Virus record (IMG/VR): IMGVR_UViG_3300038424_000251
Span: 301,300 to 365,299 of that record
Direction: 5' to 3' (one strand)
DNA: 64,000 nt
The position numbers and the translations under genes were made by a program. Within the stretch, counting starts at the first letter, position 1. Every line of letters begins with the position of its first letter. Shown piece by piece: positions 4,270-58,370 of this stretch. Below the pieces are notes generated by a model. The model ran no database searches. It was given only the letters and a program-made list of their open reading frames with translations, and had not been told where the DNA came from.

Positions 4270-4299
4270 TAAAATACCATACGCCTCTATTTATAGGGT

Positions 4300-4677
4300 A
4301 TGGAAACTGATTTTGAATTATTTGAAGGAAAATCCTTCAGGGATTTATGTAGAGATATTGTTACTAATCAAACTCATCGCAAAGAACAAATCGAAATTTT
4401 TATTGGAGATTTGCGTCCAATGATTAAAACGGTTAACGATGCTATGCAAGTTGTTCCTCTTATAAAACAATATATTGATGCAGGCATTTCTAATGACGAA
4501 CATCTTGTAAAATTGGCTCAAATTTGCCAAAGAATTATGGCTATTCAAGCTAATGTTGAAGCCGGTGGTGGTTCTTTTGGTCTTAGTGAAGAAGAAAAAA
4601 AAGAATTGATGACTACTATTGATGAGATTAAGAAATCAGATTCGGTTATTGTTAAAACTATTTCTCAAAAGGAATAA
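4300..4677 (+). CDS. Hypothetical helical phage protein
   Basis: Clean ORF with TATTTATA 4 nt upstream. Confidence 0.65.
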   Translation: METDFELFEGKSFRDLCRDIVTNQTHRKEQIEIFIGDLRPMIKTVNDAMQVVPLIKQYIDAGISNDEHLVKLAQICQRIMAIQANVEAGGGSFGLSEEEKKELMTTIDEIKKSDSVIVKTISQKE

Positions 4678-4680
4678 GTT

Positions 4681-6297
4681 ATGTCATATTGGAATAGACC
4701 TTTTAGTAACTTTGCTCCTTCGTTAGATACAGTATCTCTTTCTGCTGGTATGCGAAAGGGTAAGACTACTGCTGATGAATTTTATGAAATAGAACCTGCT
4801 ATAGTCTTAGATATAATATTAGACATAAATCATCCTTATTTTAAAGAAAAAAATTATAAATTGATTCCTGACCAATGGCCTGTCTGTATAAATGGAAAAC
4901 CGCCTCTAAATACCGACCAAGATTATACTTGGGTAGGTAGAGCGCAAGTCAGGCTTCTTTATAGTCAACGTAATGTAGCTAAAGAAGATTTGATATGGGC
5001 AATACCTTTGGAATCCAATATATCAGAATATCCTGTATTAAATGAAATTGTTGGTGTAGTATTTTATTTGGGTCAATATTATTATACAAGAAAAATTAAC
5101 ATCTTTAATACTCCTAACGCTGATGCTAATTTTAATATGGAATTAGCGTATGGTGGATTTAGAGATAATCCTCAATCTATAATTCAAGGAAATAGAGAAT
5201 TATTGGTTAATTCTACAGACCCAAAAATTCCGTATATTGGACCACCCTCTAAGTTAAACTCTTTAGGTAGTGTTGGATATGTAGGTGCATTAGGAAGATA
5301 TTTTTTTTATAATAATAGAATACGATGCCTTAAGAGAAGAGAAGGAGATTTGATTTTTGAAAGTCGTTTTGGGCAGTCTATTCGATTTGCTTCTTATGAT
5401 GACAACAGAAATAATGATAAAGGTTATAATTCTGATTTCAGTGGATATGCTGATTATAAAGGTAGTGGTATAACCAATCCATATTCTAAAACAGAAGCAG
5501 GTGGCGGCAATCCTATGCTTCTTATTCGCAATCGTCAACGACCATTAAATTCAACAAGTGATGATGAGAAAAATGTTGGTGGTTACATGCTAGAAGATAT
5601 TAATAATGATGGTTCTTCTATACATCTTACATCAGGTGTTACTTTAAGTGCATTTCAAACAACATGCTTAAAGAAAATGTGGGGAATGGGAGAAGAACAA
5701 TCTAAATTTAACGGTAATACTTTATTTGTATTTCCTAAATTATTAGGTGACCAGATAGTAATAAACAGTGATAGAATTGTTATTTCAGCTAAAAGAAACG
5801 AAATGTTTCAATATTCAAAAAAACGAATGGCATTTGTTACGGATGATGAATTTACAGTTGATGCTCAAAATCAAATAGTTATTAACACAAACAATAAAAC
5901 GGTATTAAATTCCCCGGCTATTTATTTAGGAGAATATAATCAGACTAATGAACCTGTTTTGCTTGGGCAAACATCGGTCAATTGGCTGTATAATTTGTGT
6001 AATTGGTTATTGGAACATACCCATTGGTATAAACACAATCATCCGGATGCACAGGGTGGAACAGTGGGTGGCCCAAATCCGGTTCAAACACAAGCATCGG
6101 TTCAGATAGCATCTTTGATTGTATTAAGAGATACTTTAAATTTATTAATGAGTAGAAGAGTATTTGTAGTGGGTGGCGGGCTAGCACCGGGTGTGAATGG
6201 TGGGACTATTCCAAACGGTGCATCACCTGTAACAATAACCACACCTTCTGGGACTGGAGTTCCGGGCGGATGGGGCGGGTCTAATTATAAAACATAA
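4681..6297 (+). CDS. Baseplate hub/central spike protein (gp5-like, no lysozyme domain seen)
   Basis: OB-like N-terminus (EYPVLNEIVGVV), EGDLIFESRFGQSIRF, beta-repeat region, C-terminal HTH..HNH apex motif; upstream of gp25 and gp6. Confidence 0.65.
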   Translation: MSYWNRPFSNFAPSLDTVSLSAGMRKGKTTADEFYEIEPAIVLDIILDINHPYFKEKNYKLIPDQWPVCINGKPPLNTDQDYTWVGRAQVRLLYSQRNVAKEDLIWAIPLESNISEYPVLNEIVGVVFYLGQYYYTRKINIFNTPNADANFNMELAYGGFRDNPQSIIQGNRELLVNSTDPKIPYIGPPSKLNSLGSVGYVGALGRYFFYNNRIRCLKRREGDLIFESRFGQSIRFASYDDNRNNDKGYNSDFSGYADYKGSGITNPYSKTEAGGGNPMLLIRNRQRPLNSTSDDEKNVGGYMLEDINNDGSSIHLTSGVTLSAFQTTCLKKMWGMGEEQSKFNGNTLFVFPKLLGDQIVINSDRIVISAKRNEMFQYSKKRMAFVTDDEFTVDAQNQIVINTNNKTVLNSPAIYLGEYNQTNEPVLLGQTSVNWLYNLCNWLLEHTHWYKHNHPDAQGGTVGGPNPVQTQASVQIASLIVLRDTLNLLMSRRVFVVGGGLAPGVNGGTIPNGASPVTITTPSGTGVPGGWGGSNYKT

Positions 6298-6305
6298 TAC
6301 ATAAT

Positions 6306-6860
6306 ATGAAAATAGATGAATTAAGAAAAGCTATTCGACACTTGGTAAGACAAGAAGTTAAAAAAACGGTAGCAGAAGAGGTCAGTAAAGCTATGGGTAA
6401 GGTGTTGGTGGAAATGGTAAAGGAAATTAAATCCAATAATCCTTCTAAGATAATTGAAGATGTTGAAGAAGTGCCAGAATCTACTGCTGCTATCATACAA
6501 ACAAAAAATCCAAAACTTAATTCTGTTTTGGCTGAAACTGCTCGTAATTTCAAACCATTACAGAAAACAACTGATGCATCTTTGATAGAATTGATTGGTG
6601 GCGGAATGGCAAAAATAGGTCAAGAGGAAAATATGGAATCAGAACAACCTGCTACTAAAATAGATTTCCTGAAACAAATAGTAGGACAGCCATCAGAAGT
6701 AAGTCAACCATCTGCTTTAGATGGCGGAGCTGAAGTTCCTGCTGCTTTAAAGAAGGTTTTCAAAAAGGACTTTAGAGCTATTATGAAAAGGATAGATGAA
6801 CAGAAAAAGGGAACAGCTAGTGGAGGATATATTGATACTACAAAACTTTTATCTGGATAA
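6306..6860 (+). CDS. Hypothetical virion-associated protein with an N-terminal ELRKAIRHLV amphipathic helix
   Basis: ORF within the structural operon; its N-terminus resembles the MKKSQLKxLIKEIV family. Confidence 0.6.
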   Translation: MKIDELRKAIRHLVRQEVKKTVAEEVSKAMGKVLVEMVKEIKSNNPSKIIEDVEEVPESTAAIIQTKNPKLNSVLAETARNFKPLQKTTDASLIELIGGGMAKIGQEENMESEQPATKIDFLKQIVGQPSEVSQPSALDGGAEVPAALKKVFKKDFRAIMKRIDEQKKGTASGGYIDTTKLLSG

Positions 6861-7300: not shown

Positions 7301-9289
7301 ATGGCAACAACAACACAAAAAAGCTTTCAGCCAAATAGTAAAGAAGTAAGATATCTCAATAAGGATTTTTCTCAATTTCGCCAAAATCTTATTAATTTTG
7401 CCAAGTATTATTTTCCAAACACTTATGCTGATTTTAATGATGCAGCTCCGGGTATGATGTTTATTGAAATGGCATCTTATGTTGGAGATGTTTTATCTTA
7501 TTATACTGACTATGCTTTCAAAGAGGGTCTTCTTTATAATACAACAGAGAGAAAAAATATTATCGCTCTAGCAAAATATCTTGGTTATACAACTTCGCCG
7601 GCAAAAGGTGCCACCGGACAGATAAATGTATCTCAAATTTGTCCTACTACAGTTGATGAGAATGGAAATTATGTTCCTGATAATAATTATGCATTAAGTA
7701 TTCAGGAAAATATGCAAGTGTCTAATAATGCTGGTGCATATTTTTTGACTTCTGAAACCATAGATTTCACAGTTAATACCAACTTATCTCCGTTGACTTC
7801 ATCAGTTTATCAAAGAGATAATACAGGAGTTCCCACATTTTTCTTATTGCAAAAAACTTCTAATATTCGTTCAGGACAAATTGTAACTAAAACTTTTACA
7901 ATTAGTGCAATGCAACCATTTATAAATCTTTATCTTGATGAGGATAATGTTTTGGAAATCATAAGCGTGGTTGATTCTGATAATAATCAATGGCATCAAG
8001 TTGATTTCTTAGCTCAAGAAATGGTTCTTACTGATGTTCCAAATAATGAAGCATTTGAAGGAACGCTTTCCACTTATCAAGGTACTGTTCCTTATATTCT
8101 TGATTACTTGAAAACATCACGAAGATTTACAGTTAATGTAGATGAAAATAATAAAACATATTTGCAATTTGGAGCTGGAACGAGTGGATTTGCTGATGAA
8201 ATTATTAATTTAAGTTCACAACAAATTGGAGTTGGATTATCTAACATAAGTAATCTTAATTTACCAATAGACCCTTCTAATTTTCTTAATAATGACACTT
8301 ACGGATTAGCACCACAAAATACTACATTGACTGTAACATATACAATTGGTGGTGGTTTTGAGTCAAATTCACCATCAAATTCCATTATCAATGTCGATTC
8401 AGTTACTATAAACAATTCAACAGATGGACTTACACCTGAACAAACGTCACTTCTCAATACCGTTCAAAGTTCTTTAAAAGTTAACAACCCAGATGCTACC
8501 GTGGGCGGTGCTGGACCTGAAAGTAATGACAATATTCGGCAAAATGCTATTGCTGCTTTTGCAGCTCAGAATAGAGTAGTTACACAAAATGATTATTTGG
8601 CAAGAGTATATGCATTACCCCCAAAATATGGTTCAATTGCTAAAGCGCAGGTTATAACTTATAATAGTTTGGATGTATATCAAAATCAAATTTTAACAGG
8701 AACAGTTAGTCAAGACAATATTGCTATTGTTAATAATGCCAATACCCAAACTTATTTTAGGAATGTTGCTTTTGATAGAAGCAATCCTTTTGCTGTTAAC
8801 CTTTATATTTTGTCATTTGATGAAAATGGAAATCTTACTCAATCAAATGAAGCGTTGGTAACTAATTTGTTGACTTATTTGAGACGTTATAGAATGTTGA
8901 CTGATGGCATTAATGTTATTGATGGTTATATAATCAATATAGGAGTCCAATTTACAATCAGTGTTTTCAAAGGTTATAATAAGAAAGATGTATTAACAAA
9001 TGCTATTGCTGCTGTTCAAGCTTTTTTTGATATAGATAAATGGGAATTCTCACAACCTATTAATTTAAGTAGCTTAAGATTGGAAATTGCTAAAGTTGAA
9101 GGTGTTCAGACGGTTGTATCGTTAAATATTATCAATCTTACACCATTAACAACCAATGGTGGAAATTATTCTCCCGTAGCATACGATATTTCAGCTGCTA
9201 CTAAAAATGACATAATTTATCCTTCTTTGGACCCATCCATTTTTGAAGTAAAATATCCAAACAGTGATATACAAGGAACCACAATGTAA
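7301..9289 (+). CDS. gp6: Baseplate wedge subunit gp6 (baseplate J-like)
   Basis: KDFSQFRQNL..YADFN..GMMFIEMASYVGDVLSYY and GGAGPES..QNRVVTQNDY motifs. Confidence 0.85.
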   Translation: MATTTQKSFQPNSKEVRYLNKDFSQFRQNLINFAKYYFPNTYADFNDAAPGMMFIEMASYVGDVLSYYTDYAFKEGLLYNTTERKNIIALAKYLGYTTSPAKGATGQINVSQICPTTVDENGNYVPDNNYALSIQENMQVSNNAGAYFLTSETIDFTVNTNLSPLTSSVYQRDNTGVPTFFLLQKTSNIRSGQIVTKTFTISAMQPFINLYLDEDNVLEIISVVDSDNNQWHQVDFLAQEMVLTDVPNNEAFEGTLSTYQGTVPYILDYLKTSRRFTVNVDENNKTYLQFGAGTSGFADEIINLSSQQIGVGLSNISNLNLPIDPSNFLNNDTYGLAPQNTTLTVTYTIGGGFESNSPSNSIINVDSVTINNSTDGLTPEQTSLLNTVQSSLKVNNPDATVGGAGPESNDNIRQNAIAAFAAQNRVVTQNDYLARVYALPPKYGSIAKAQVITYNSLDVYQNQILTGTVSQDNIAIVNNANTQTYFRNVAFDRSNPFAVNLYILSFDENGNLTQSNEALVTNLLTYLRRYRMLTDGINVIDGYIINIGVQFTISVFKGYNKKDVLTNAIAAVQAFFDIDKWEFSQPINLSSLRLEIAKVEGVQTVVSLNIINLTPLTTNGGNYSPVAYDISAATKNDIIYPSLDPSIFEVKYPNSDIQGTTM

Positions 9290-17232: not shown

Positions 17233-17295
17233 AATATGGAAAGATGGAAAAAAACACATTTAAGAGAATACTTATAAGAGAAAAGAGAAATTCAT

Positions 17296-21291: not shown

Positions 21292-21326
21292 TTTGAAAAT
21301 TATTTTTTATATGGATAGTTATAGTT

Positions 21327-24026
21327 ATGATTGCAAATATTTATAACCAAAATTTTGGATGGTCTGTAGCATGCGATGGATATTGGGCAGCAGTGGGAAA
21401 TCCTAGTTTATTTCGTTATGACCCAATGACAAGTAGCCTTACCAGAACAGGTTCCGTAGAAGTTTATAAATATAATATAAATTCAGATATTCATGATTAT
21501 AAAACAACTCTTTTTCGCCCTTTAACTCCATCCGAATTGATTTTGTTAACAACAGAATATAATAATCCTTTTCCAACAGGTCCAACCGATTATATACAAA
21601 CAGAATATACAGGTTCCATCCCTTATACTGCAGACTTGGATTTGTCTGTTGATACGGGATTATATTATACAGCTTCGGAAGATGGATATGGATTATCATT
21701 AGATTTACGTAATACTTTATTAGCAATAGGAAATCCATACTTTACAAGTACATTTACATTTATAACGGAGTCTTTTGTTTTTACAGGGTCGGGATATGTT
21801 GACCTTTTTGATGTTTCAGTATTAGATATAGACCCTTATGCTAAGAGAATACCACCTACAATTACCAGTTATTTCTCTTCATCACTAAATGGGCCTGTGA
21901 CTGTTCAAGCAAATGTTCCATCAGTACAAAATTATTCATTTGTATTACTTCAATCATTGGATTTATTGACTCCGGGAGCTAATTGGATAAACGTGTCAAT
22001 AGCATCAACATCAAATAGTGGTGGTAATGTAAACATACAAACATTTTATACAAATACAGACCTTGTAAATTTAAGTCTAAGAACAGTTGGAATAGTTGGA
22101 ACAAATCCATACTTAACGACAATATATAATCCAAATCCTGTCATAACATCTTCCTTTGGGTATTCTGTTTCATTAAATGATGAATGGTTGGCTGTAGGTT
22201 CACCTCTTGAATCAGGAAGTATGGGAGCAGTATTCATGTTTAGAAAATTGGATGAAAATAATCTGAGTTGGTCGTTTTTTCAAACGTTACCACTACCTTC
22301 CGATATTGATGTAGATGATGATTTTGGTGCTAGTATTGGAATGAATAAAGCATCATCCTCTTTTAGTTGGAGTATGGTTGTTGGAAGTTTGAAATCAAGT
22401 GAATCTAGAGCTTATATTTATGAATTTGATGGAACTGAATGGAATAATACGTTTACTTTGTATCCTGATAGTGGTTCTATTTATCCACTTCCATTTTATC
22501 CTACTTTTCCTATAGTTTTAAATTATCCGAATGTTAATGATTCTTTTGGTCATTCTGTTTCGATGTATGGTAATACAGTAATGGTAGGAGCACCAACTGA
22601 CAGAACTATACAAGAATATGAAAATGACAGTTTATCATATACACAAGGTTCTGTTTATTTCTTTGAAAGATGTGCTAATGCAAACTATGGATATTATTTG
22701 GCTAGAAAATCATATGGTAATGAAAAGATTATCAACAATAATATGTTAGGTTGGTCGGTGAGTGTTTATGATCAATATGCTGTAGCAGGAGTTCCAAAAA
22801 TAAATGCTTTATCTTCTTCAATTTGTTATCTTCGAGGTTCTTTATTCCAAAAATGGTTTTGTGGAGATAGTCCTGATGCTCTTTTAAATGGGCAATTTAT
22901 TTTATATAACAAAAACACAGGTTCTATACCCGACACAACTAATATTGATTGGGATATATCCAATATTTATCAAGTTAAAAAACAGTTTTTGTCACCATAT
23001 CGTGTGTATGGGTGGGATGCAAATATTAGTAATCAATTCATCATAATAGGTTCTCCTATGTTGATATCAGGGTCAAACACTATCATGGATTTGAGTCCTT
23101 TTACGGGAAGCTTTACTGGTAGTGTGGATGTTATTGGCGACCTTAGTGGAAAATCTTACATTTATAATCTTAAAAATCTTCGCCCAAATTTTTATGTTGG
23201 TAATGTTTTTTATAGAAACGGTAAAATGGTTATTATGACTTCTGGTTCAAATTTTGAGGGATTACAACTCAGTAATACTGTTAATGAATATGATTATGAT
23301 ATAGAATTCACATCTTCTCAGACCATATTTGAAAAACAAGTTGTTTGTCCTGTTGATATAGGAGAATTTAACGTTAGTACCAATCCAACAGCAATTATAT
23401 TTCCAAATGCCGAATTTGATATAAATCAAAATGGCAAATTTGATTTTCAAGATGCAGATGTATTACTTAGGTATATGGCCTACAAGAATACTGAAGTAAC
23501 AGGACAACCAAATACTGATTGGAGTTCTTCAATTGTTGATACTACTACAAATGAAGAACCAGCTGTGTTTAAGATGTATTCATCTTTTTGGGTTGGAACA
23601 GATAATTTATTTGCCTCAAGTTATTCCACCATAAATAATACTATGTATGGAGATTTGGATTTTAACAATGATAATAAAATTGATAATAATGACATGTATA
23701 TTTTGTGGAAATACTTTATTTACAGATTAACACAGAAAAATTATAATCTTTATATTACTCCAAATTCACAGAACAAATTTTTGGCTAATATTCTTGATTA
23801 TATGAATAGTAAAACTCTTCGTGGTCAACCACCGATGATTAATCCTACCTTTTTAGAATATGAAAGTTTAGTCAAGCAGGACCCAACGGGTTCATATTTG
23901 GCACCTACAGTAACTTCAATTGGATTATATGATGGATGTGATTTAGTAGCCATAGCAAAATTGGGTTCGCCAATCAAAATTACCCCAGATTTTCCTATTA
24001 ATTTTGTGGTGAAAATAGATTTCTAA
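21327..24026 (+). CDS. Tail protein with FG-GAP-type propeller repeats, dockerin-like Ca-binding loops and the conserved tail C-terminus
   Basis: FGWSVA, FGYSVSL..LAVGSP, FGHSVS..VMVGAP; DINQNGKFDFQD and DFNNDNKIDNND loops; TSIGLYD..AIAKLGSP. Confidence 0.7.
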   Translation: MIANIYNQNFGWSVACDGYWAAVGNPSLFRYDPMTSSLTRTGSVEVYKYNINSDIHDYKTTLFRPLTPSELILLTTEYNNPFPTGPTDYIQTEYTGSIPYTADLDLSVDTGLYYTASEDGYGLSLDLRNTLLAIGNPYFTSTFTFITESFVFTGSGYVDLFDVSVLDIDPYAKRIPPTITSYFSSSLNGPVTVQANVPSVQNYSFVLLQSLDLLTPGANWINVSIASTSNSGGNVNIQTFYTNTDLVNLSLRTVGIVGTNPYLTTIYNPNPVITSSFGYSVSLNDEWLAVGSPLESGSMGAVFMFRKLDENNLSWSFFQTLPLPSDIDVDDDFGASIGMNKASSSFSWSMVVGSLKSSESRAYIYEFDGTEWNNTFTLYPDSGSIYPLPFYPTFPIVLNYPNVNDSFGHSVSMYGNTVMVGAPTDRTIQEYENDSLSYTQGSVYFFERCANANYGYYLARKSYGNEKIINNNMLGWSVSVYDQYAVAGVPKINALSSSICYLRGSLFQKWFCGDSPDALLNGQFILYNKNTGSIPDTTNIDWDISNIYQVKKQFLSPYRVYGWDANISNQFIIIGSPMLISGSNTIMDLSPFTGSFTGSVDVIGDLSGKSYIYNLKNLRPNFYVGNVFYRNGKMVIMTSGSNFEGLQLSNTVNEYDYDIEFTSSQTIFEKQVVCPVDIGEFNVSTNPTAIIFPNAEFDINQNGKFDFQDADVLLRYMAYKNTEVTGQPNTDWSSSIVDTTTNEEPAVFKMYSSFWVGTDNLFASSYSTINNTMYGDLDFNNDNKIDNNDMYILWKYFIYRLTQKNYNLYITPNSQNKFLANILDYMNSKTLRGQPPMINPTFLEYESLVKQDPTGSYLAPTVTSIGLYDGCDLVAIAKLGSPIKITPDFPINFVVKIDF

Positions 24027-24056
24027 CTATATTTATAAACAACGGAGACATATTAT

Positions 24057-24897: not shown

Positions 24898-24917
24898 TCA
24901 ATATATTTATAAACTAT

Positions 24918-30523: not shown

Positions 30524-30540
30524 TGAGCCTATTTATAGGC

Positions 30541-32757: not shown

Positions 32758-32820
32758 AGACTTTATTTATAAATATTATGAAAATTTTTTGTAAACTATG
32801 TAATATAAAAGGAATATATT

Positions 32821-35050: not shown

Positions 35051-35070
35051 ATTGAACATATTTATGTATT

Positions 35071-37368: not shown

Positions 37369-37429
37369 TGAAATAATACATTTTCATATGTTCACATCAT
37401 ATTTATAAATAAGTGTAAAGGTTGAATAT

Positions 37430-49820: not shown

Positions 49821-50123
49821 TTATAAATAGGGCCGGTTTTCCCATTTTTGCTTATAATTAGCAAAATATTCTTCAAGGTCTTTAAATTTTAGGAATGTTC
49901 GTTTTTCTTTTTTTGTTCTATCTTCAATAATAAAACCTGTGCCTTTTTTATGGCTTAATCTCATTTCTGGTCTTTTAAGAGCATAATAAAACATACCATC
50001 ATTTTTAAAACCCATATCTTCAAGATACATAGCATCGGTTGCTTTCCAATTATCAACCGGAGTTAATCCTTTATCACGTTCGTCGCTAACAATATGTTTT
50101 AATAATTCTGTAAGTTTAATCAT
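49821..50123 (-). CDS. Small protein with an MIKLTELL N-terminus
   Basis: Same N-terminal motif as 58046 and 40361. Confidence 0.6.
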   Translation of the reverse strand: MIKLTELLKHIVSDERDKGLTPVDNWKATDAMYLEDMGFKNDGMFYYALKRPEMRLSHKKGTGFIIEDRTKKEKRTFLKFKDLEEYFANYKQKWENRPYL

Positions 50124-50904: not shown

Positions 50905-51026
50905 ACATAAATAAATATTACATAATTTTAGTTAAATATCAGTTTCTTTAAGGTAAGATATAGTTTCATTTCATAATAGAATTTTATTATTTAATAAAAT
51001 TTTTTGTATTTTAGAAAATATAATAC

Positions 51027-51034
51027 TATTTATA
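51027..51034 (+). promoter_or_regulatory. Putative late promoter TATTTATA for the scaffold-capsid operon (representative of about 15 copies)
   Basis: The same octamer lies upstream of genes at 4288, 24030, 24904, 30530, 32764, 37400, 55629, 56299, 56712, 58361 and, on the - strand, 49822-49829. Confidence 0.7.
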
Positions 51035-51131
51035 TTACAGAAATGCAGTAATTTCTATTTGCTGCCACGTATTCAAAAACGTAAACTTCATTGGAGTTCA
51101 AATAACTTCAGAAAACAAAGAAAACAATTTT

Positions 51132-52724
51132 ATGATTAATAGTGAACTATTGAAAGAAGCGATTGCTGATGCTAAGGCAGTAAGAGCCACTGCTCTCGCC
51201 AATGCTAAAGCCGCTCTTGAAGAAGCCTTCGCTCCCCGTTTTGAGGCAATGTTTGCCGACAAATTAAAAGAGGAATCCGAAGAAGAAGAAGACCAAGAAG
51301 AGGGACTACAGGAAGTAGAAGCTCCAAATCAGGTTCATGGAAGTGGTGGAGAAGCTAAGGGACCAGCAACCAAAGCCGTTTCTAAAGGTAATCCCAAAAC
51401 ACCAAAAGGTGGCGCCGGTGATGTGGATTTTAAAGCCGTTCAAGCTGGATTAGGCCCAACAGGCGTTCCTAAACTCGGTAAGAAAGTTAATGAAACTGCC
51501 GAAGAAGAAGAAGAGGAAGATGAAGGTAGGAAGAAAATGGATGAAACTGCCGAAGAGGAAGATGAAGGTAGAAGGGAAGAAGAGGGCGAGGAGGAAGATG
51601 AGGGTAGGGTTGAAGAAGCTGGTCTAACTTCGGAAGATTTAGATGAAATTATTGCAGAGTTGGAAAATGAAGTAGCAGAGGAAGAAGAAGGTAGAACGGA
51701 AGAAGAACCTGCTGCTCCAGAACTAACACCAGCACCAGAAGATAGTGGTGGAGTGTCATCGCCTGTTACTGGTGATGAAAGAGAACCCGTTACTGGTGAC
51801 GAAGAACCTGCTGCCAATATTGAAGCAGAACCGGGTAGTGAAGTTGATATTAATCTTGAACCGGAACCAGAAGCTGAACCGGGAGCTGATACAGTCCCCC
51901 CAACAGCTATGGATGCTGGTGGAGCAAGTAGGCGACCAGTTAGAGAACCTGCTGAAGAACCGGTTGAAGAACCTGTTGGAGCTGCAGAAGATGAAGAAAA
52001 TATCAATCTAGATGAATTACTCGCCGCTCTTAATGAAGAAGGCGAAGAAGAAGAGGAAGAAGAAGGGTATGAAGAAATGGATGAAGCCTTACAAAATCAA
52101 GGTCTTCCAACCAAAGAACTTGCTGGTCAGGACAAAACCGGTGGTGTAAAGGGTTATCCACCCGGTCCAGATGCTAGTAAGAGACAGCTACCGGGTAAAA
52201 ATCATAATATTCAAGGTAAAGGCAACATTGGTAGTGGGTCTGAAACAGGTAAACCAATGGCAGAAGCATCTCAATACAGGGTTGCTTTGAAAGAAGCCTA
52301 TAAAACCATTGAATTCCTCCGTGGACAAATTAATGAGGTCAATCTGTTGAATGCTAAACTACTTTACACGAACAAGTTGTTTAAAGAATTCGCAGGTGTT
52401 TTGGACGATTCATATCGTATGAAAATCGTTGAATCATTTGACCTAACAAAAAGTGTTCGTGAAGTCAAGCTGGCCTACGCCCTATTGGCGGAGTCCTTGA
52501 ATTTCGGTACGCAAATGACAAAAACCCACTCTGTAAAATCGGTTGTAAAACCGGTTTCGCAAAAGGGACAAGTTAAGCAAATTACCGAAGGATTCGCATC
52601 AAAGCCGGTGTCATCAACAAAACCTTCCAAGTTAATTACTGAAGGTAATGAGATGGCTCTTAGATTCAAGAAGCTCGCTGGAATCAAAGATACACCGAAG
52701 ACTACTACTCCTGAAAAGAAGTAA
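51132..52724 (+). CDS. Prohead core scaffolding protein (gp22-like)
   Basis: LLKEAIADAKAVRATALANAKAALEEAF, very acidic middle, INEVNLLNAKLLYTNKLF, ITE..RFKKLAGI; directly upstream of the MCP. Confidence 0.8.
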   Translation: MINSELLKEAIADAKAVRATALANAKAALEEAFAPRFEAMFADKLKEESEEEEDQEEGLQEVEAPNQVHGSGGEAKGPATKAVSKGNPKTPKGGAGDVDFKAVQAGLGPTGVPKLGKKVNETAEEEEEEDEGRKKMDETAEEEDEGRREEEGEEEDEGRVEEAGLTSEDLDEIIAELENEVAEEEEGRTEEEPAAPELTPAPEDSGGVSSPVTGDEREPVTGDEEPAANIEAEPGSEVDINLEPEPEAEPGADTVPPTAMDAGGASRRPVREPAEEPVEEPVGAAEDEENINLDELLAALNEEGEEEEEEEGYEEMDEALQNQGLPTKELAGQDKTGGVKGYPPGPDASKRQLPGKNHNIQGKGNIGSGSETGKPMAEASQYRVALKEAYKTIEFLRGQINEVNLLNAKLLYTNKLFKEFAGVLDDSYRMKIVESFDLTKSVREVKLAYALLAESLNFGTQMTKTHSVKSVVKPVSQKGQVKQITEGFASKPVSSTKPSKLITEGNEMALRFKKLAGIKDTPKTTTPEKK

Positions 52725-52766
52725 TAATCTAGTGAGCAAAAAATAAAAATAGAGAAAAAACAATAT

Positions 52767-54614
52767 ATGGAAAATATTAAATCATTGTTAACAAACACTC
52801 TCAATCCTCAAGCTCGTTTGATGCAGGAAACCCGTGGTCTTGTGACCAAGTGGGATAAAACCGGTCTTCTTGATGGTATTAAGAGTGATATTGAGAAGTC
52901 CAATATGTCGGTCTTGCTCGAAAATCAGGCTAAACAACTGATTGAAGAAGCAACTGCTACTGGTACTTCCGCAAACTCTGAACAGTGGGCTGGCGTAGCT
53001 CTCCCGTTGGTCAGACGTGTATTTGCTGAATTTGCTGCGAAGGAATTCGTATCCGTTCAGCCTATGAACCTCCCATCTGGTCTTGTGTTCTACTTGGATT
53101 TCAAGTATGGCTCACCTCACGGTGGTAATCCTGCCGATACATCAGGTTCATATTATCAATCATTGTTCGGTGGTACTGGTGCTAAACTAGGTTCTACTGA
53201 TACATTCGGCGGTGGTCTATACGGCGCAGGCCGATATGGTTACACCATTAATCAAAAAGCTGCAACTGCAGTAACATTTAGTGCAGCTACATCAACATTG
53301 GAAGATATTGACTGGTTGGCTAATTATTATACTCAATATGCCTCATCTGGTTCAGTACAAGGAATTTTGAATAGTATTTCAGCATCGTTTAATAACAATC
53401 AGCTTATTACTTTTAAAACTTCAAATTTTTATAGTACTACGACTAGTCAAGGTAATCCGTTTGACCCATTAGCTGTTCGTTCATTCATGCCATATAGCAT
53501 TGTTACTGGATCTACAGCAGGGCTAACTGCTTCATTTCAATCAGGTAGTGCTGCCGGCTCCGGTCCTATGTATTTCCCACCATTTACAAAATTTGTAGTG
53601 GGTACTGGTATCGATGCTGGTGGTGCTCAGGTTGGTGAAATCCAGTTTGTCTTATCAGCTTCGGCTGGTGCTACTGGTTCCTTCACTGGTAATATTTATT
53701 ACACAGTTCAACCAAGCCCACAAGACCGTGGTGACTTCGAAGATAATCCAAACAATGCTAATGCTACTGGTACTGATACGGGATTTGTTTATGGAACAGG
53801 TAAGTCAACTACTGATACTGGTCTTAACAAGGATATCGGTATTCCAGAAGTAAACTTGCAACTTAACTCCGAACCAATCGTAGCTAAGACACGTAAGTTG
53901 AAAGCTGTCTGGACTCCTGAACTTGCTCAAGACTTGAATGCTTATCATAGCATTGACGCAGAAGCAGAATTGACTGCTCTGTTGTCTGAATATGTTTCAA
54001 TGGAAATTGACCTTGAAATTCTTGATATGTTGATTAACGCAGTATTACCTATCAATATTGAACGTTGGAGTGCAAGGCTTAATACGGAAATAGTTCCTAC
54101 TGGAACTGGTACTTACCAATTCGTTCAAACAACAACGGCAGGTACTGGTGGTTACTACACCAAGGCAACATGGTACCAAACTCTTGGTAACAAGATTCAA
54201 AAGGTATCCAACAGGATTCACCAATTGACGCTTCGTGGTGGTGCTAACTTCATGGTTATCTCCCCAACAGTGGCAACTGTTCTTGAATCTATTCCGGGAT
54301 TCGTAGTGAATACCGATGGCGACCAAGCAAAGTTTGCTATGGGCGTTTCAAGGGTTGGTTCATTTGCTTCAAGGTTCCAAGTTTACAAGAACCCATATAT
54401 GACTGATAATATCATTCTAATGGGCTTCCGTGGTAATAACTTCTTGGAAACTGGTGCAGTATATGCTCCATACATTCCATTGGTTCAGACACCGTTAGTG
54501 TATGACCCTGTGAACTTCACGCCAAGACGTGGTGTAATGACCCGTTACGCGAAGAAGATTGTTCGTCCTGAATTCTATGGCAAGATTTACATTGCCGATT
54601 TGGACACGGTATAA
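52767..54614 (+). CDS. gp23: Major capsid protein (T4 gp23-like)
   Basis: VSVQPMNLPSGLVFYLDF, AKTRKLKAVWTPELAQDLNAYH..DAEAEL, YAPYIPL, FTPRRGVMTRYA. Confidence 0.96.
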   Translation: MENIKSLLTNTLNPQARLMQETRGLVTKWDKTGLLDGIKSDIEKSNMSVLLENQAKQLIEEATATGTSANSEQWAGVALPLVRRVFAEFAAKEFVSVQPMNLPSGLVFYLDFKYGSPHGGNPADTSGSYYQSLFGGTGAKLGSTDTFGGGLYGAGRYGYTINQKAATAVTFSAATSTLEDIDWLANYYTQYASSGSVQGILNSISASFNNNQLITFKTSNFYSTTTSQGNPFDPLAVRSFMPYSIVTGSTAGLTASFQSGSAAGSGPMYFPPFTKFVVGTGIDAGGAQVGEIQFVLSASAGATGSFTGNIYYTVQPSPQDRGDFEDNPNNANATGTDTGFVYGTGKSTTDTGLNKDIGIPEVNLQLNSEPIVAKTRKLKAVWTPELAQDLNAYHSIDAEAELTALLSEYVSMEIDLEILDMLINAVLPINIERWSARLNTEIVPTGTGTYQFVQTTTAGTGGYYTKATWYQTLGNKIQKVSNRIHQLTLRGGANFMVISPTVATVLESIPGFVVNTDGDQAKFAMGVSRVGSFASRFQVYKNPYMTDNIILMGFRGNNFLETGAVYAPYIPLVQTPLVYDPVNFTPRRGVMTRYAKKIVRPEFYGKIYIADLDTV

Positions 54615-54640
54615 TCTTAACAGATAATCAATTAAACAAA

Positions 54641-54673
54641 AAAGGAGCCGTAGAAATACGGCTCTTTTCTTTT
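54641..54673 (+). terminator. Rho-independent terminator after the MCP
   Basis: GAGCCGTA-GAAA-TACGGCTC stem followed by TTTTCTTTT. Confidence 0.9.
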
Positions 54674-54731
54674 GCATTTATTTAATTTTATTTCATTCTT
54701 GTTTAGATTTTATTGTAGAATTTTGATATCT

Positions 54732-55589
54732 ATGGAATATAAATCAAAAATTATGAAAATAGCGAATGTACATGGTGTAGAATGGAAAATGGACGATAAT
54801 ATTTATGAATGGCATAGACGGTATAAGTGTATTGAAGTGGGACCAGAATCTATCTGGAATTCAAACCCAGAAATAGTTTCTGAAATGACAGCTTTTAAAT
54901 TATATTGTATAGAAAATTCTCCGAGTGTTTTTATTGATATTGGAACATATTGTGGAATAGTTTCTTCGGTATATTGTTCTTTAGTAAAAGACCATCGATG
55001 TTATTCAATAGAACCTATTCGTTCTCATTGTGAGAGATTACAAAATACTGCTAAATTAAATAATTGGAATTTAAGTACACATCCAATTGGGTTAAATAAT
55101 TATGTTGGAAAATGTTATTATCACAATACTAATATGGCACGATTTACAAACGACCCAAACTTTAAAGTGTCTGATGCTGAGATTAATAGTAATCCTGAAA
55201 ATGCTAAAATACATGAAGTTAATATTGATACCTTAGATAATTTTGTTAAATCAAATAATATAAAACCAAATTTAATAAAAATAGATGTAGAGGGATACGA
55301 AGTACCAATACTTGAAAAAGCTCAAGAAACATTATCAAACGATGCTGTAGATTTATTTATTGAAACACATAGAAATGAATGTATAGAACTTGGTTGGAAT
55401 ATAGAAAAATTATGTGATTATATACCTCAAAAGGATTATATTTTTTATACTACAGGTCTTTTGTATGACCAAAATTCTCTTCCAAGTTATATTTTTAGGC
55501 AAAGAATTTTTACTGATTTAAAAGATTATATACTTAATCATAAAAGTACTATGAGATTTGTGGCTATAAATAAAAAAAATTTAGGTTAA
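54732..55589 (+). CDS. FkbM-family SAM-dependent methyltransferase
   Basis: FIDIGTYCG, YSIEP, DTLDNF, LIKIDVEGYE. Confidence 0.85.
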   Translation: MEYKSKIMKIANVHGVEWKMDDNIYEWHRRYKCIEVGPESIWNSNPEIVSEMTAFKLYCIENSPSVFIDIGTYCGIVSSVYCSLVKDHRCYSIEPIRSHCERLQNTAKLNNWNLSTHPIGLNNYVGKCYYHNTNMARFTNDPNFKVSDAEINSNPENAKIHEVNIDTLDNFVKSNNIKPNLIKIDVEGYEVPILEKAQETLSNDAVDLFIETHRNECIELGWNIEKLCDYIPQKDYIFYTTGLLYDQNSLPSYIFRQRIFTDLKDYILNHKSTMRFVAINKKNLG

Positions 55590-55670
55590 AATAAAGAAAG
55601 AAATTTGAAATAATATTTTATTTTTAGATATTTATAGTGCAATAAAGTTATATTTAACAGTTAAAATATT

Positions 55671-56225
55671 ATGACAAATCTATCTATCCATTTATGTGAT
55701 ACTTCAGCATCTTTAGTTTTAACATCTGCTTCATTTGCAGATCAATCAATTAGTTCAAGCTATGCTATAAGCTCATCTTGGACGTTATTAACACAACAAC
55801 AGATTTCATGTTCTTGGGCAAGTTCATCTATGTCATCATCTTGGGCACCACCAACCTCTGTTTTGAGATATACAACTACTGCGTCATTTGCAAGTGGACC
55901 ATATATGTACAATATTTCGTTACCGTTTATTCCTTTTAGAACAGGAGTAGGAATCTTGTGTATTAATAATGATGGGACTAGTGGTTATCAATCAGGGTCA
56001 TTGTTAGATATTAGCACTATTAATGGCGCAGCAACCGTGGGTGGTGCCAGTACTGGTCAAATCTTTTGGAATATTAATGAAAATATTGTTACTGTTAGGA
56101 CTACTAATCGTACTGTTGGTTATGAAGCTAGTTGGGCACTTTGGAAAGCTACTACTTATGGTGATAATCCTATAGGTGGGTTATCATCATGGAATAATTT
56201 TGTAATTCAAGTGAATGCAGAATAA
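55671..56225 (+). CDS. Small Ser-rich fibre-like protein
   Basis: SSSYAISSSW/SWASSS stalk followed by a beta-rich C-terminus; TATTTATA at 55629. Confidence 0.55.
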   Translation: MTNLSIHLCDTSASLVLTSASFADQSISSSYAISSSWTLLTQQQISCSWASSSMSSSWAPPTSVLRYTTTASFASGPYMYNISLPFIPFRTGVGILCINNDGTSGYQSGSLLDISTINGAATVGGASTGQIFWNINENIVTVRTTNRTVGYEASWALWKATTYGDNPIGGLSSWNNFVIQVNAE

Positions 56226-56242
56226 TTTTAATATTTGAATAC

Positions 56243-56275
56243 AAAGGAGCCGAATTTCTTCGGCTCTTTTCTTTT
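56243..56275 (+). terminator. Rho-independent terminator, near-copy of 54641
   Basis: GAGCCGAA-TTTC-TTCGGCTC stem followed by TTTTCTTTT. Confidence 0.9.
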
Positions 56276-56313
56276 GCATTTATTCAATAAAAATTGAATA
56301 TTTATATTAGAAT

Positions 56314-56703
56314 ATGAAGCAAAGTCAACTTAAACAACTTATTAAAGAGATTGTATATTGTATTTTTAAAGAACAGTTTGGTGAACCAACTCCACAAAAG
56401 TTAATACCTGATGATGAAGAAGAACTATGGAAAATAGTACAGAGTTTACCTATTGATTATTCAATTCAATTTTCAATTTTTCATCCAATATCAAAAGGGT
56501 TGTTGATTATACTTCATAGTAGTAAGGGAAATGTATTTGCAGCTACCAGTCTTGGTGGGTTAAAACATGCTGGTCCACCTGATGGAAAATGGCATGTACC
56601 GGGTGAGAAAATTTTAAGAATTTTAGTAAAGGATGTATATGATTATGGTGAAAATAATGATGTATATTATTCCATAGTTAAAACTACTCCAACTAACCTT
56701 TAA
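56314..56703 (+). CDS. Putative internal head protein
   Basis: MKQSQLKQLIKEIV..FKE N-terminus; own TATTTATA. Confidence 0.6.
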   Translation: MKQSQLKQLIKEIVYCIFKEQFGEPTPQKLIPDDEEELWKIVQSLPIDYSIQFSIFHPISKGLLIILHSSKGNVFAATSLGGLKHAGPPDGKWHVPGEKILRILVKDVYDYGENNDVYYSIVKTTPTNL

Positions 56704-56724
56704 AATTTTTATATTTATATCAAT

Positions 56725-58053
56725 ATGACCGATTTTATTTTTAAGGAATCATATCATGATAATATGTCAGATGCTGAAAAAGAAGCATTGGCTCTCTCTT
56801 ATTGGTCAATAGGACAGTCAGATGAAGATGGTGAAGATATTTCGTGGAAAAATTGGTGTTGGATTTATAAAAATGACATATTGCGCTACAAAAAAGGACA
56901 AACGCATGGTATCAACTTTGGTATTGATAGAGAAAATTATTTTAGAGGTTGGTATGATGCTAAAAAGAATACAATATCTGTGGTTTTTCCTGCACATGAA
57001 CTTAGAAAATTTGGTAATAGAAGGCCATCAGAAGATGACATACCACAATTACTTTATCAAAAACTAATTAATACATTTGGCGCTGGGCGTCCAAAATTCA
57101 TTGTATTTGAGAATGCTACACTGATAAAAAGAAGTGAATTAAAATTGCTTCTAAAAGAAATTGTTCAACAAATTCTTCTAAACGAAAGAGAAGAGAATGA
57201 ATATTATTGGTTAGAACCAAATTTACAGTTTCAAAGAGTTCCGTGGGAAGGACATGCAAATTGGGCAAGAAATTATTTAGAGAATATGGGAAAAAAATTA
57301 TCTTATGGTGATTATGATGATGTGGGTGTTTATAATAGAATGTATGAATTGGGATTTGTTAGAGTTGTCAAAGTTGGTTATTTTGATGGTGATATTCTGA
57401 CATATAATTATAAAAAAGGATTTCCGCCTTCTCCACAAAAAATAAAAGCAATGAAGAATTTTGCAATAGAAAAGAATTGTGACACAATTAGAGATGATAC
57501 GAGTGGAAGAATTGAAAATTTGTTACAGGAAGGAATATTTCTTAAAGAAACAATGACTTATAAAGAACTTTTAGCTTTAACAACTCCTGAAAGAAAAGAA
57601 CGTGCAGCAAATGTAAGAGTTCGCTCTATTCCTGTTAGTATTGAAGAGGGATTAGAACAATGGAATTTCAGATATAAATCCAGTCCACAAACCACTGTAA
57701 CTGATGAACCATTTGAAGGTCATATTACATTCTTAAAAGGTAGAGTAGAACGAAGTGATGATGCTATGAATTTAGAGTGTAAAGTTGATTGTAGTTGTCC
57801 TGATTTCATGTATAGATTTGCTTATAATGATACTCAAAAAGGTGCAAGTGATATTGGACCTGACAGTTTAAGCGGTTGTATTAATAGAAAACCAAAACCA
57901 GCTTATGATTATGGTGAAGGCTTATGTAAACACTTGGCAGCATTGCGTAGATATTTACAAACAAAAATATTAGCGACTAGAAGAAGTAATTTATTTGAAG
58001 CAATCGGTGATGTGGCAAAACAAGGACCATTTAATATAACCTATTATGATTAA
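56725..58053 (+). CDS. Multi-module putative internal polyprotein with a C-terminal SWIM-type Zn finger
   Basis: Internal KRSELKLLLKEIVQQILLNE; CSCPDF..GLCKHL. Confidence 0.6.
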   Translation: MTDFIFKESYHDNMSDAEKEALALSYWSIGQSDEDGEDISWKNWCWIYKNDILRYKKGQTHGINFGIDRENYFRGWYDAKKNTISVVFPAHELRKFGNRRPSEDDIPQLLYQKLINTFGAGRPKFIVFENATLIKRSELKLLLKEIVQQILLNEREENEYYWLEPNLQFQRVPWEGHANWARNYLENMGKKLSYGDYDDVGVYNRMYELGFVRVVKVGYFDGDILTYNYKKGFPPSPQKIKAMKNFAIEKNCDTIRDDTSGRIENLLQEGIFLKETMTYKELLALTTPERKERAANVRVRSIPVSIEEGLEQWNFRYKSSPQTTVTDEPFEGHITFLKGRVERSDDAMNLECKVDCSCPDFMYRFAYNDTQKGASDIGPDSLSGCINRKPKPAYDYGEGLCKHLAALRRYLQTKILATRRSNLFEAIGDVAKQGPFNITYYD

Positions 58054-58327
58054 ACTTAAATCATTATTAACTGAATTTCAAGGTGAAAATTTAAAAGTGG
58101 GAGATTTTGTTCTTACAACTGGGAAGGGTCCATTAACAGGACCTAATTCTCCATTGGGGTTTGATAATCTTCCAGCAATAATTGTAGGTAAACGACAAAA
58201 TAAGTATCTTATTATGTTTAGAGGGTCAATCAGTCCATTAGAAGCCACAGATGAACAAATAATAAAAGTATCAAAACCTCATAGATTTCCTCTATCACCT
58301 TGGGTCAAAAAGTATCTTGGAAAATAA
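58046..58327 (+). CDS. Small protein with an MIKLKSLLTE N-terminus and an SH3/KOW-like body
   Basis: LKVGDFV..AIIVG..KYLIMF. Confidence 0.55.
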   Translation: MIKLKSLLTEFQGENLKVGDFVLTTGKGPLTGPNSPLGFDNLPAIIVGKRQNKYLIMFRGSISPLEATDEQIIKVSKPHRFPLSPWVKKYLGK

Positions 58328-58370
58328 TATCTAATTTTAATGTATGATTAACGGATAATATATTTATAAT

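What the first reader, a model, noticed from the sequence alone, without database searches (positions are those of the whole stretch)
4288..58368. TATTTATA late-promoter motif (reverse complement of the T4 TATAAATA) often 2-7 nt from the ATG
Seen: TATTTAT(A/G) lies upstream of genes on the coding strand. Gaps to the ATG are 4 nt (4288), 6 (24904), 3 (30530), 4 (35059), 7 (56299), 5 (56712), 2 (58361) and 6 (49822-49829, minus strand). Longer gaps occur at 24030, 32764, 37400, 51027 and 55629. Variants TACTTATA (779, 17269) and TAGTTATA (1757, 21316) also occur. The motif flips with gene orientation. Known: T4 gp55 recognises a -10-only TATAAATA. Inference: the sigma at 3340 reads a different octamer, and many late mRNAs are leaderless or nearly so, leaving no room for a Shine-Dalgarno.
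Basis: partly seen in the sequence, partly recalled or inferred. Interest (0 to 1): 0.6.

Follow-up and report, generated by a model that had tools for sequence, protein, structure and literature searches.

The report
Phage late promoter abutting start codons
A giant uncultured phage marks its virion-gene operons with a conserved eight-base promoter box, TATTTATA, apparently read by the phage's own distant T4-gp55-like sigma factor. The box sits so close to the ATG that the messages should start at or within a few bases of the start codon.

Summary
The window is the last 64 kb of a 365-kb T4-related jumbo phage.

- **Enrichment:** TATTTATA is the most enriched 8-mer just upstream of gene starts (28 genes against 4.05 ± 2.03 in local dinucleotide shuffles). 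Its reverse complement is not enriched (7 against 5.0).
- **Spacing:** gaps to the ATG peak at 2-7 nt.
- **Relatives:** the same octamer, orientation and spacing dominate a 296-kb relative and 65 metagenomic relatives. It also precedes terminase, portal, sheath, tube and tape-measure genes in the cultured Flavobacterium phage immuto, there with 10-30 nt leaders.
- **Placement:** sites are conserved at orthologous genes while the flanks diverge.
- **Sigma:** ORF 3340-4269 is a single-copy sigma70-family protein. Evidence is the fold, remote similarity to T4 gp55, and family members that hit the gp55 PHROG.
- **Polymerase:** no phage RNA polymerase was detected.
- **Early promoters:** they look like TTGACA-N17-TATAAT, lie outside the window, and also end 6 or 9 nt from ATGs. 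Shine-Dalgarno cores are rare.

Best reading: a -10-only late promoter read by the phage sigma on host RNA polymerase, giving leaderless or nearly leaderless mRNAs. Transcription starts were not mapped, because no RNA run was listed.

The parts
3340..4269 (+). Gene for a 309-aa sigma70-family protein. It has a Lys-rich, low-confidence N-terminal stretch of about 80 aa, a sigma domain 2 at about residues 82-189, and a second helical domain at about 199-300. It is a distant relative of the T4 late sigma gp55 and the candidate reader of the octamer.
   Evidence: It holds the only Sigma70_r2 trace in the genome (E 0.03) and is single copy. hhalign against T4 gp55 gives E 3.4e-4. 8 of 79 family members hit phrog_234 'late sigma transcription factor'. 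Fold matches to sigma factors reach Z about 10 with rmsd 2.2-3.0 A over 84-96 residues. An ESM Atlas viral sigma-factor cluster scores 0.97.
4288..4295 (+). TATTTATA box 4 nt before ATG 4300. It heads the operon that runs into the baseplate-wedge gene (7301-9289).
   Evidence: cTATTTAT(A/G/T) is kept at the orthologous site in 26 of 37 diverged relatives examined, while the flanks diverge. The orthologues in G003 and immuto also carry it.
4277..4303 (+). Hairpin whose loop holds the box and whose 3' arm holds the start codon (CCATAC/GTATGG plus CC/GG). It would sequester the AUG only in read-through transcripts from upstream.
   Evidence: Folding gives -8.4 kcal/mol. 92% of cells are paired in 10 relatives, but covariation is weak. 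This is not a genome-wide feature of the sites.
24030..24037 (+). TATTTATA box 19 nt before ATG 24057.
   Evidence: The G003 orthologue also carries the box.
24904..24911 (+). TATTTATA box 6 nt before ATG 24918.
30530..30537 (+). TATTTATA box 3 nt before the in-frame ATG 30541. That ATG is the likely true start of the 744-aa ORF listed from 30523.
32764..32771 (+). TATTTATA box (part of the palindrome TATTTATAAATA) 49 nt before ATG 32821. It lies upstream of the large-terminase gene (33437-35050).
35059..35066 (+). TATTTATG variant 4 nt before ATG 35071, a small gene directly ahead of the portal gene (35287-37368).
37400..37407 (+). TATTTATA box (palindrome TATTTATAAATA) 22 nt before ATG 37430.
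   Evidence: The orthologues in G003 and immuto both carry the box.
49822..49829 (-). TATTTATA box on the minus strand, 6 nt before ATG 49815.
50906..50917 (-). Overlapping TATTTATT and TATTTATG on the minus strand, 5 and 1 nt before ATG 50904.
51027..51034 (+). TATTTATA box 97 nt before ATG 51132. It heads the operon that holds the major capsid gene (52767-54614). This site has a long leader.
55629..55636 (+). TATTTATA box 34 nt before ATG 55671.
56299..56306 (+). TATTTATA box 7 nt before ATG 56314.
56712..56719 (+). TATTTATA box 5 nt before ATG 56725.
58361..58368 (+). TATTTATA box 2 nt before ATG 58371.
779..786 (+). TACTTATA, a possible weak variant box, 20 nt before ATG 807. Low confidence.
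   Evidence: Position-3 variants are only modestly enriched.
1757..1764 (+). TAGTTATA, a possible weak variant box, 25 nt before ATG 1790. Low confidence.
17269..17276 (+). TACTTATA, a possible weak variant box, 19 nt before ATG 17296. Low confidence.
21316..21323 (+). TAGTTATA, a possible weak variant box, 3 nt before ATG 21327. Low confidence.

Best explanation
(A/C)TATTTATA is the -10-type element of this phage clade's late promoters, and it has no -35 partner. After early genes are transcribed from sigma70-type promoters elsewhere in the genome, the phage's single gp55-like sigma (ORF 3340-4269) binds the host core RNA polymerase and directs it to the octamer. The octamer heads the virion-gene operons (baseplate, terminase, portal, capsid, sheath, tube).

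In this phage and its close relatives the start codon lies 2-7 nt after the octamer, which is 4-9 nt after the TATTTA hexamer. That is where a sigma70-family holoenzyme normally starts. The late mRNAs of operon-first genes therefore begin at the A of AUG or carry at most a few bases of leader, and they must be translated without a Shine-Dalgarno sequence.

Shown here: enrichment, orientation, spacing, conservation, association with late genes, and the sigma fold and family of the protein.

Inferred: that the protein reads this box, that the host polymerase is used, the exact transcription start, and the late timing.
For: - **Enrichment and strand specificity:**
- **Sharp octamer, A/C at the preceding base, no -35 information:**
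- **Gap distributions:** 2-7 nt in G000. 3-7 nt at 44 sites in relative G003, where the octamer occurs in 47 of 334 upstream windows against 1.6 expected. In 65 distinct sigma-bearing metagenomic loci, 83 of 170 occurrences precede an ATG-ORF against 11 for the reverse orientation.
- **Late-gene association:** in cultured Flavobacterium phage immuto, 25 of 45 occurrences lie in sense orientation upstream of genes (2.3 expected). They precede terminase, portal, tail sheath, tube, baseplate hub, tape measure and tail fibres.
- **Separation from early promoters:** in G000 the boxes sit in the large-gene modules at 0-60 and 260-365 kb. The sigma70-like promoters sit at 60-260 kb. Only one gene has both.
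- **Conserved placement at orthologues:** 9 of 13 against 10 of 72 (p 1e-4) with G003, and 5 of 8 against 5 of 32 (p 0.015) with immuto. At one site the box is kept in 26 of 37 relatives examined while the flanks diverge and the gap varies from 3 to 18 nt.
- **Box directly after strong terminators in relatives:**
- **Sigma identity:**
- **Co-occurrence of sigma and box:** the sigma homologue and the box occur together in all four genomes examined, although their early promoter types differ. G000 uses TTGAC-N16-19-TAnAAT and Mel-JY01 uses TTG-N17-21-TAnnTTTG.
- **No phage RNA polymerase found:**
- **Leaderless geometry:** the -10 hexamers of the sigma70-like early promoters end 6 nt (8 cases) or 9 nt (9 cases) from the ATG. 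A Shine-Dalgarno core occurs in only 10% of genes.
- **Method control:** the same pipeline on T4 recovers TATAAATA with gaps of 13-34 nt and a Shine-Dalgarno core in 56% of genes.
Against: - No transcription start or timing data exist. No RNA run was listed for this sequence.
- The sigma-box pairing rests on co-occurrence in four genomes plus 65 loci, not on a binding test.
- Direct scans of ORF 3340 against Pfam, PHROGs and PDB sequences give nothing significant. The hhalign probability against gp55 is only 38%.
- Unlike gp55, the protein has a second C-terminal helical domain that may be sigma4-like, yet no -35 element is seen.
- Gaps of 2-4 nt are shorter than the T4 geometry, which leaves about 5 nt between box and start. 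Some starts would then fall inside the ATG unless start-site choice is flexible.
- No gp45 clamp homologue was detected with Pfam PF02916. gp33 was not searched. A T4-style clamp-activated mechanism is therefore unsupported.
- Several sites have long leaders (19-97 nt), so 'leaderless' applies to only about two thirds of the sites.
Confidence: 0.65

Rival explanations
1. The octamer is a real promoter element, but something other than ORF 3340 reads it. Candidates are the host's own sigma, a host alternative sigma, or another phage DNA-binding protein. ORF 3340 would then serve a different promoter class.
For: No binding data exist. ORF 3340 has a second domain that could read a -35 element, which these promoters lack. 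Other divergent transcription factors could escape the family scans.
Against: The octamer is the same in phages whose presumed host-type early promoters differ and whose recorded hosts differ. A host factor would not predict that. ORF 3340 is the only sigma-like gene found. Its family occurs together with the box in every genome and in 54 of 65 loci examined.
Confidence: 0.15
2. The octamer is a promoter, but the mRNAs are not truly leaderless. Transcription starts inside or immediately after the box, giving 3-10 nt leaders, or the octamer-proximal ATG is not the start codon that is used.
For: Gaps of 2-4 nt are too short for the T4-like spacing. The spread of gaps (2-7 nt) is wider than expected for an exact start at the A of the ATG.
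Against: The proximal ATG opens the conserved N-terminus of the protein at the orthologous site. Nearly all proximal starts are ATG (26 ATG, 1 GTG, 3 TTG). Canonical sigma70-type promoters in the same genome have their -10 hexamer 6 or 9 nt from the ATG, which predicts leaders of 0 or 3 nt. In either case there is no room for a Shine-Dalgarno sequence.
Confidence: 0.2
3. The octamer acts on RNA, not DNA. It would be a translation-initiation enhancer, or an endonuclease processing site that cuts polycistronic RNA just ahead of start codons.
For: It is AU-rich and close to start codons. The genome lacks Shine-Dalgarno sequences, so some other initiation signal must exist.
Against: It is present at only about 7% of genes (operon heads), not at internal genes. 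The distance to the ATG ranges from 3 to over 60 nt across relatives while the octamer stays invariant. In relatives it follows strong intrinsic terminators directly, so new initiation is needed there. Its architecture matches the 8-bp T4 late box (PMC2988020).
Confidence: 0.06
4. It is a composition artefact of AT-rich intergenic DNA.
For: The genome is 33% G+C, and other A/T-rich words are also enriched upstream of genes.
Against: Local dinucleotide-preserving shuffles give 4.05 +/- 2.03 against 28 observed. The reverse complement, which has identical composition, is not enriched. Single-mismatch neighbours sit at background. Placement is conserved across relatives.
Confidence: 0.01

Closest known systems
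Bacteriophage T4 late transcription: gp55 sigma and the TATAAATA late promoter
   Same: Both have an 8-bp A/T-only box in the -10 position and no -35 element. The consensus is tightly kept at a few dozen sites (T4: about 50 sites, 32 of them perfect; PMC2988020). The sites head virion-gene operons on either strand. The phage is T4-related in portal, capsid, terminase and baseplate wedge. The candidate reader is a small phage sigma with a sigma2 domain that is remotely similar to gp55.
   Different: The octamer is TATTTATA, not TATAAATA. The two differ at three positions (4, 5 and 6) when read in the same sense. T4 boxes lie 13-34 nt from the ATG and are followed by Shine-Dalgarno sequences, whereas here the gap is 2-7 nt and no Shine-Dalgarno sequence is present. 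The protein core is about 230 aa with a second helical domain, whereas gp55 is 185 aa with no sigma4 (PMC2988020). The gp55 PHROG does not hit this protein directly. No gp45 homologue was found with Pfam PF02916, and gp33 was not searched.
Leaderless mRNAs from -10 boxes placed 6-7 nt before the ATG (lambda cI from PRM; many genes of Actinobacteria and Deinococcus). This comparison rests on my own knowledge plus PMC8244752 for the definition.
   Same: A -10 element sits just ahead of an ATG start, with no Shine-Dalgarno sequence.
   Different: Here the arrangement applies to two promoter classes of one jumbo phage and to a whole uncultured clade. The studied jumbo phages phiKZ (no leaderless transcript found; PMC8244752) and AR9 (5' UTRs of 26-491 nt; PMC5312081) do not show it.
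T4 gene e / soc style control, where a late promoter lies inside a hairpin that hides the ribosome site in early read-through RNA (my own knowledge)
   Same: At 4277-4303 the box lies in the loop and the start codon lies in the 3' arm of a conserved hairpin.
   Different: It was seen convincingly at this one site only. It is not a general property of the sites, and covariation is weak.

Membership tests
sigma70 family (protein 3340-4269) | Sigma domain 2 fold (core-binding and -10-recognition helices) | tested here: met
   The AlphaFold model has pLDDT 83.6. All 50 entries shown by VIA-align are sigma factors. Domain-2 matches reach Z 8.5-10.3 with rmsd 2.2-3.0 A over 84-96 residues, at model residues 82-189. 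Most of the best Foldseek rows are sigma factors, although their E-values are only 0.03-2.
sigma70 family (protein 3340-4269) | Significant match to the curated Sigma70_r2 or Sigma70_r4 sequence models | tested here: not met
   PF04542 gives E 0.03 and 13 bits, below the 24-bit cut-off. PF08281 gives no match. Pfam and PHROG scans of the protein are empty. A motif resembling region 2 (KGKAFSYF..AK.YLI) is conserved.
T4 gp55 late-sigma family (phrog_234) | Sequence homology to gp55 | tested here: inconclusive
   The family profile against T4 gp55 gives hhalign E 3.4e-4 and probability 38% over 96 columns. 8 of 79 family members hit phrog_234, best 4.3e-5. The window's own protein does not hit it.
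T4 gp55 late-sigma family (phrog_234) | No sigma4 domain, and a C-terminal sliding-clamp-binding motif working with gp33 and gp45 | tested here: inconclusive
   The protein has an extra helical domain at about residues 199-300. It aligns with the C-terminal part of full-length sigmas only at high rmsd. PF02916 (gp45 clamp) was not found. gp33 and the clamp-binding motif were not tested.
T4-type late promoter | A single conserved 8-bp A/T box at -10, no -35 element, tens of near-perfect copies ahead of late genes | tested here: met
   There is no information upstream apart from a weak T-rich patch near -17. 35 genes have an exact box within 100 nt upstream. The association with late genes is shown. 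The position relative to the transcription start was not testable.
T4-type late promoter | Consensus TATAAATA on the non-template strand | tested here: not met
   The sense-strand consensus is TATTTATA. TATAAATA in the sense orientation is at background, 7 against 5.0.
Leaderless mRNA | The primary 5' end lies at, or within a few nt of, the start codon | not testable with these tools
   No RNA run was listed. Only the geometry supports it.

The most novel reading that the evidence does not exclude
A large uncultured clade of T4-related phages is involved (about 2,400 homologues of the sigma, in 1,805 clusters at 50% identity). It includes jumbo genomes of 300-365 kb. These phages would run both host-sigma early promoters and phage-sigma late promoters so that the first gene of each transcript is translated from a 5'-terminal AUG. 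That would make it a phage whose operon-first genes are expressed largely without leaders or Shine-Dalgarno sequences. It would be paired with a previously unannotated sigma family that reads TATTTATA.
Probability: 0.45. Interest if true: 0.75.

Novelty: new variant of a known kind. Interest (0 to 1): 0.62.

Why it matters
- **Annotation:** it gives a function (late sigma) to a very common 'hypothetical protein' of environmental phages. It also gives a one-line rule, (A/C)TATTTATA, for finding late operons and correct start codons in thousands of metagenomic contigs, including cultured Flavobacterium phages.
- **Evolution of specificity:** it shows how far the T4 gp55 solution has drifted. The architecture is the same but the box is different, so it offers a natural pair for studying how a sigma2 domain changes -10 specificity.
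- **Translation:** if the geometry reflects real 5' ends, these jumbo phages would be an unusually clean system for leaderless translation. The studied jumbo phages phiKZ and AR9 lack it (PMC8244752, PMC5312081).

Tried and rejected
- **RNA evidence:** The look-up of sequencing runs listed no RNA run for window 51000-56999.
- **Direct family and PDB sequence searches of ORF 3340:** empty. The first AlphaFold model, built from 24 close sequences, was unusable (pLDDT 51.5).
- **Hairpin as a general feature:** the idea that a hairpin enclosing the box and hiding the ATG is common to the sites was rejected. 8 of 35 sites reach -6 kcal/mol or lower, against 12.7% of control genes (Mann-Whitney p 0.39).
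- **A -35 partner:** rejected. There is only a weak T-rich patch near -17.
- **Bacteroidetes-type TAnnTTTG promoters in this genome:** not enriched.
- **T at -1 of the ATG as a mark of promoter-proximal genes:** rejected. It is equally common at all genes.
- **Terminator directly upstream of the box:** absent in this genome, 0 of 35 sites. It is seen only in relatives.
- **Phage-encoded RNA polymerases and gp45 clamp:** not found. The T7-type search had no positive control.
- **Literature:** full-text searches for the octamer together with promoter, phage or late found nothing relevant.
- **Complex prediction:** not used, because the host polymerase is unknown.

Full report
**Context.** The window is bases 301300-365299 of a 365,299-bp IMG/VR virus record with 33% G+C. 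PHROG scans identify T4-type proteins:
- baseplate wedge (7301-9289);
- large terminase (33437-35050);
- portal (35287-37368);
- major head protein (52767-54614);
- SbcC-like nuclease, primase and others.

The nearest named relatives by capsid and by the protein at 3340 are Flavobacterium phage vB_FspM_immuto (160 kb), Microcystis phage Mel-JY01 (190 kb) and the uncultured huge phage LR756508.

- TATTTATR occurs 43 times in the window against 24.5 +/- 4.9 in shuffles. The excess is about the number of sites that lie in sense orientation upstream of genes (14).
- I laid the whole genome in the script box, called 499 ORFs crudely and asked without prior which words are enriched in -30..-1. TATTTATA is the top 8-mer (25 genes against 1.84 expected).
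- Against local dinucleotide-preserving shuffles of each -40..-1 window, the count is 28 against 4.05 +/- 2.03 (maximum 10). The reverse complement, which has the same composition, gives 7 against 5.0.
- Gaps to the ATG peak at 2-7 nt.
- Independently of gene calls, 26 of 117 occurrences are followed within 2-10 nt by an ATG that opens at least 60 codons, against 7 in the other orientation.
- The box is sharp. Single-mismatch neighbours sit at background. The preceding base is A or C. Upstream there is only a weak T-rich patch near -17 and no -35 element.
I keep them as low-confidence sites.

**2. It is a clade-wide signal tied to late genes.**

*Conservation at one orthologous site.* The gene after the 4288 box has orthologues in 26 of the 37 diverged contigs I examined, where the upstream protein is 57-87% identical. 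In those 26 the intergenic flanks have diverged, yet cTATTTAT(A/G/T) is retained. The gap to the conserved ATG varies from 3 to 18 nt. In one subclade the box directly follows a strong hairpin plus T-run.

*Relative G003.* I fetched a complete 295,831-bp relative, G003. There the octamer is again the top word (47 of 334 genes against 1.6 expected), with 44 sites at gaps of 3-7 nt.

*Metagenomic loci.* In 65 distinct metagenomic loci around the same upstream gene, 83 of 170 occurrences precede an ATG-ORF, mostly at 3-7 nt. The opposite orientation gives 11.

*Cultured Flavobacterium phage immuto.* 25 of its 45 occurrences lie in sense orientation within 80 nt upstream of genes (2.3 expected), with 10-30 nt A-rich leaders. 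The annotated genes behind them are:
- terminase large subunit;
- portal (gp20);
- tail sheath;
- tail tube;
- baseplate hub;
- tape measure;
- tail fibres.

*Mel-JY01.* It shows 15 against 3.0 expected, with gaps of 12-70 nt.

*Placement at orthologues.* 9 of 13 box-bearing genes of this genome have the box at their G003 orthologue, against 10 of 72 other genes (p 1e-4). For immuto the figures are 5 of 8 against 5 of 32 (p 0.015).

*Separation within the genome.* The boxes lie in the large-gene modules (0-60 and 260-365 kb). They are spatially separate from a second promoter class.

An invariant octamer at a lineage-dependent distance from the ATG, found at operon heads only and sometimes right behind terminators, is what a promoter predicts. 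A ribosome signal or an RNA-processing signal would not predict this.

**3. The protein at 3340-4269.** Ordinary scans are empty. The only Sigma70_r2 trace in the whole genome falls inside this ORF (E 0.03).

- The family is very large and unnamed: 2,361 hits in the word search and 1,805 clusters at 50% identity. Its conserved core covers residues about 80-300.
- A profile of 79 diverse members aligns with T4 gp55 over residues 85-183 (hhalign E 3.4e-4, probability 38%). The alignment includes a motif resembling sigma region 2 (KGKAFSYF).
- 8 of the 79 members hit the gp55 PHROG 'late sigma transcription factor' and 3 hit another sigma PHROG.
- With that alignment AlphaFold gives a confident model (pLDDT 83.6).
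- Most of the best Foldseek rows are sigma factors, with E-values of only 0.03-2.
- VIA-align gives Z 8.5-10.3 for sigma domain 2, at rmsd 2.2-3.0 A over 84-96 residues.
- The ESM Atlas places it next to a viral 'RNA polymerase sigma factor' cluster (0.97).
- It is single copy.
- No beta-like or T7-like RNA polymerase was found (the T7-type search had no positive control). A phage sigma acting on host core polymerase is therefore the economical model.

The sigma homologue and the box occur together in all four genomes examined, although the presumed host-type promoters differ:
- this genome has 33 upstream matches to TTGAC-N16-19-TAnAAT (4 expected);
- Mel-JY01 has 17 matches to TTG-N17-21-TAnnTTTG (3.3 expected);
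- immuto has neither.

A box that stays constant while the host-type promoters change argues that a phage-encoded factor reads it. This remains an inference.

**4. Leaderless geometry.**

- If TATTTA is taken as the -10 hexamer, the ATG lies 4-9 nt after it here (5-9 nt in G003; mode 6-7 there). That is the normal hexamer-to-start distance.
- The sigma70-like early promoters of the same genome are canonical. Their hexamers end 6 nt (8 cases) or 9 nt (9 cases) from the ATG, which predicts leaders of 0 or 3 nt.
- Shine-Dalgarno cores occur in only 10% of genes, against 4.6% in a control window.
- As a control, the same pipeline on T4 recovers TATAAATA as the top word in -60..-1, with gaps of 13-34 nt and Shine-Dalgarno cores in 56% of genes. 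The T4 late box is described as an 8-bp TATA box about one helical turn upstream of the start, with no -35 element (PMC2988020).
- The studied jumbo phages phiKZ (no leaderless transcript) and AR9 (UTRs of 26-491 nt) differ from this picture (PMC8244752, PMC5312081).
- About one third of the boxes here have longer leaders (19-97 nt), for example the one ahead of the capsid operon at 51027.
- No RNA run was listed for this sequence, so the starts remain predictions.

**5. Comparison and novelty.** In function this looks like T4 late transcription: a small phage sigma, an 8-bp A/T box, no -35 element and virion genes downstream. It is not a plain member of that system, for four reasons:
- the box differs at three positions (4, 5 and 6) when read in the same sense (that it is the reverse complement is a coincidence of strings);
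- gp55 homology is remote;
- the protein has an extra C-terminal domain;
- no clamp homologue was found, and gp33 was not searched.

Full-text searches found no description of this box. The sigma homologues in cultured phages are annotated 'hypothetical protein'. I rate it a new variant of a known kind.

**Verdict.** The promoter reading is very likely (about 0.85). The full model, in which the phage sigma reads the box on host polymerase and produces late, leaderless or near-leaderless mRNAs, stands at about 0.65.

Noticed in passing
G000 60-260 kb (outside the window), e.g. genome 126468(-), 175344(+), 233102(+), 241078(-): There is a second promoter class, close to gcTTGACa-N17-(TG)nTATAAT: 33 upstream matches against 4 expected. 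It sits ahead of small genes, and its -10 hexamer ends 6 or 9 nt from the ATG. None lies in the window.
   Followed up: partly
window 4277-4303: A hairpin (-8.4 kcal/mol) has the TATTTATA box in its loop and the start codon in its 3' arm. It is kept in 10 relatives (92% of cells paired), but covariation is weak. It resembles the T4 gene e / soc arrangement, in which early read-through RNA hides the start site.
   Followed up: yes
all gene starts of G000 and G003: The base before the ATG is T in 66% (G000) and 74% (G003) of genes, and the base after the ATG is A in 62%. A is raised at -3, -5/-6, -11 and -13/-14. This holds for promoter-proximal and internal genes alike and is unexplained.
   Followed up: partly
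window 32764-32775 and 37400-37411: The box occurs as the 12-nt palindrome TATTTATAAATA. This contains TATTTATA on both strands and also the T4-type TATAAATA.
   Followed up: no
Microcystis phage Mel-JY01 (PP395634; loci L118-L127): Its upstream regions are enriched for TTG-N17-21-TAnnTTTG (17 against 3.3 expected). That is the promoter type known from Bacteroidota (my own knowledge), yet the recorded host is a cyanobacterium. About 30% of its genes have a Shine-Dalgarno core, and several share a leader word, AACCTAACAGGA.
   Followed up: no
window 3340-3580 (residues 1-80 of the sigma-like protein): There is a Lys-rich, low-confidence N-terminal extension of about 80 aa. Most family members (about 240-260 aa) lack it.
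   Followed up: no
window 21327-24026: An 899-aa protein carries an FG-GAP repeat (E 2e-19) and a weak dockerin-like match. It may be a host-binding or surface-binding virion protein.
   Followed up: no
window 30523/30541 and 49845/49815: The longest-ORF starts (30523; 49845 on the minus strand) lie upstream of a TATTTATA box. The in-frame ATGs just after the box (30541; 49815) are the more likely starts. The box can therefore be used to correct start-codon calls.
   Followed up: partly
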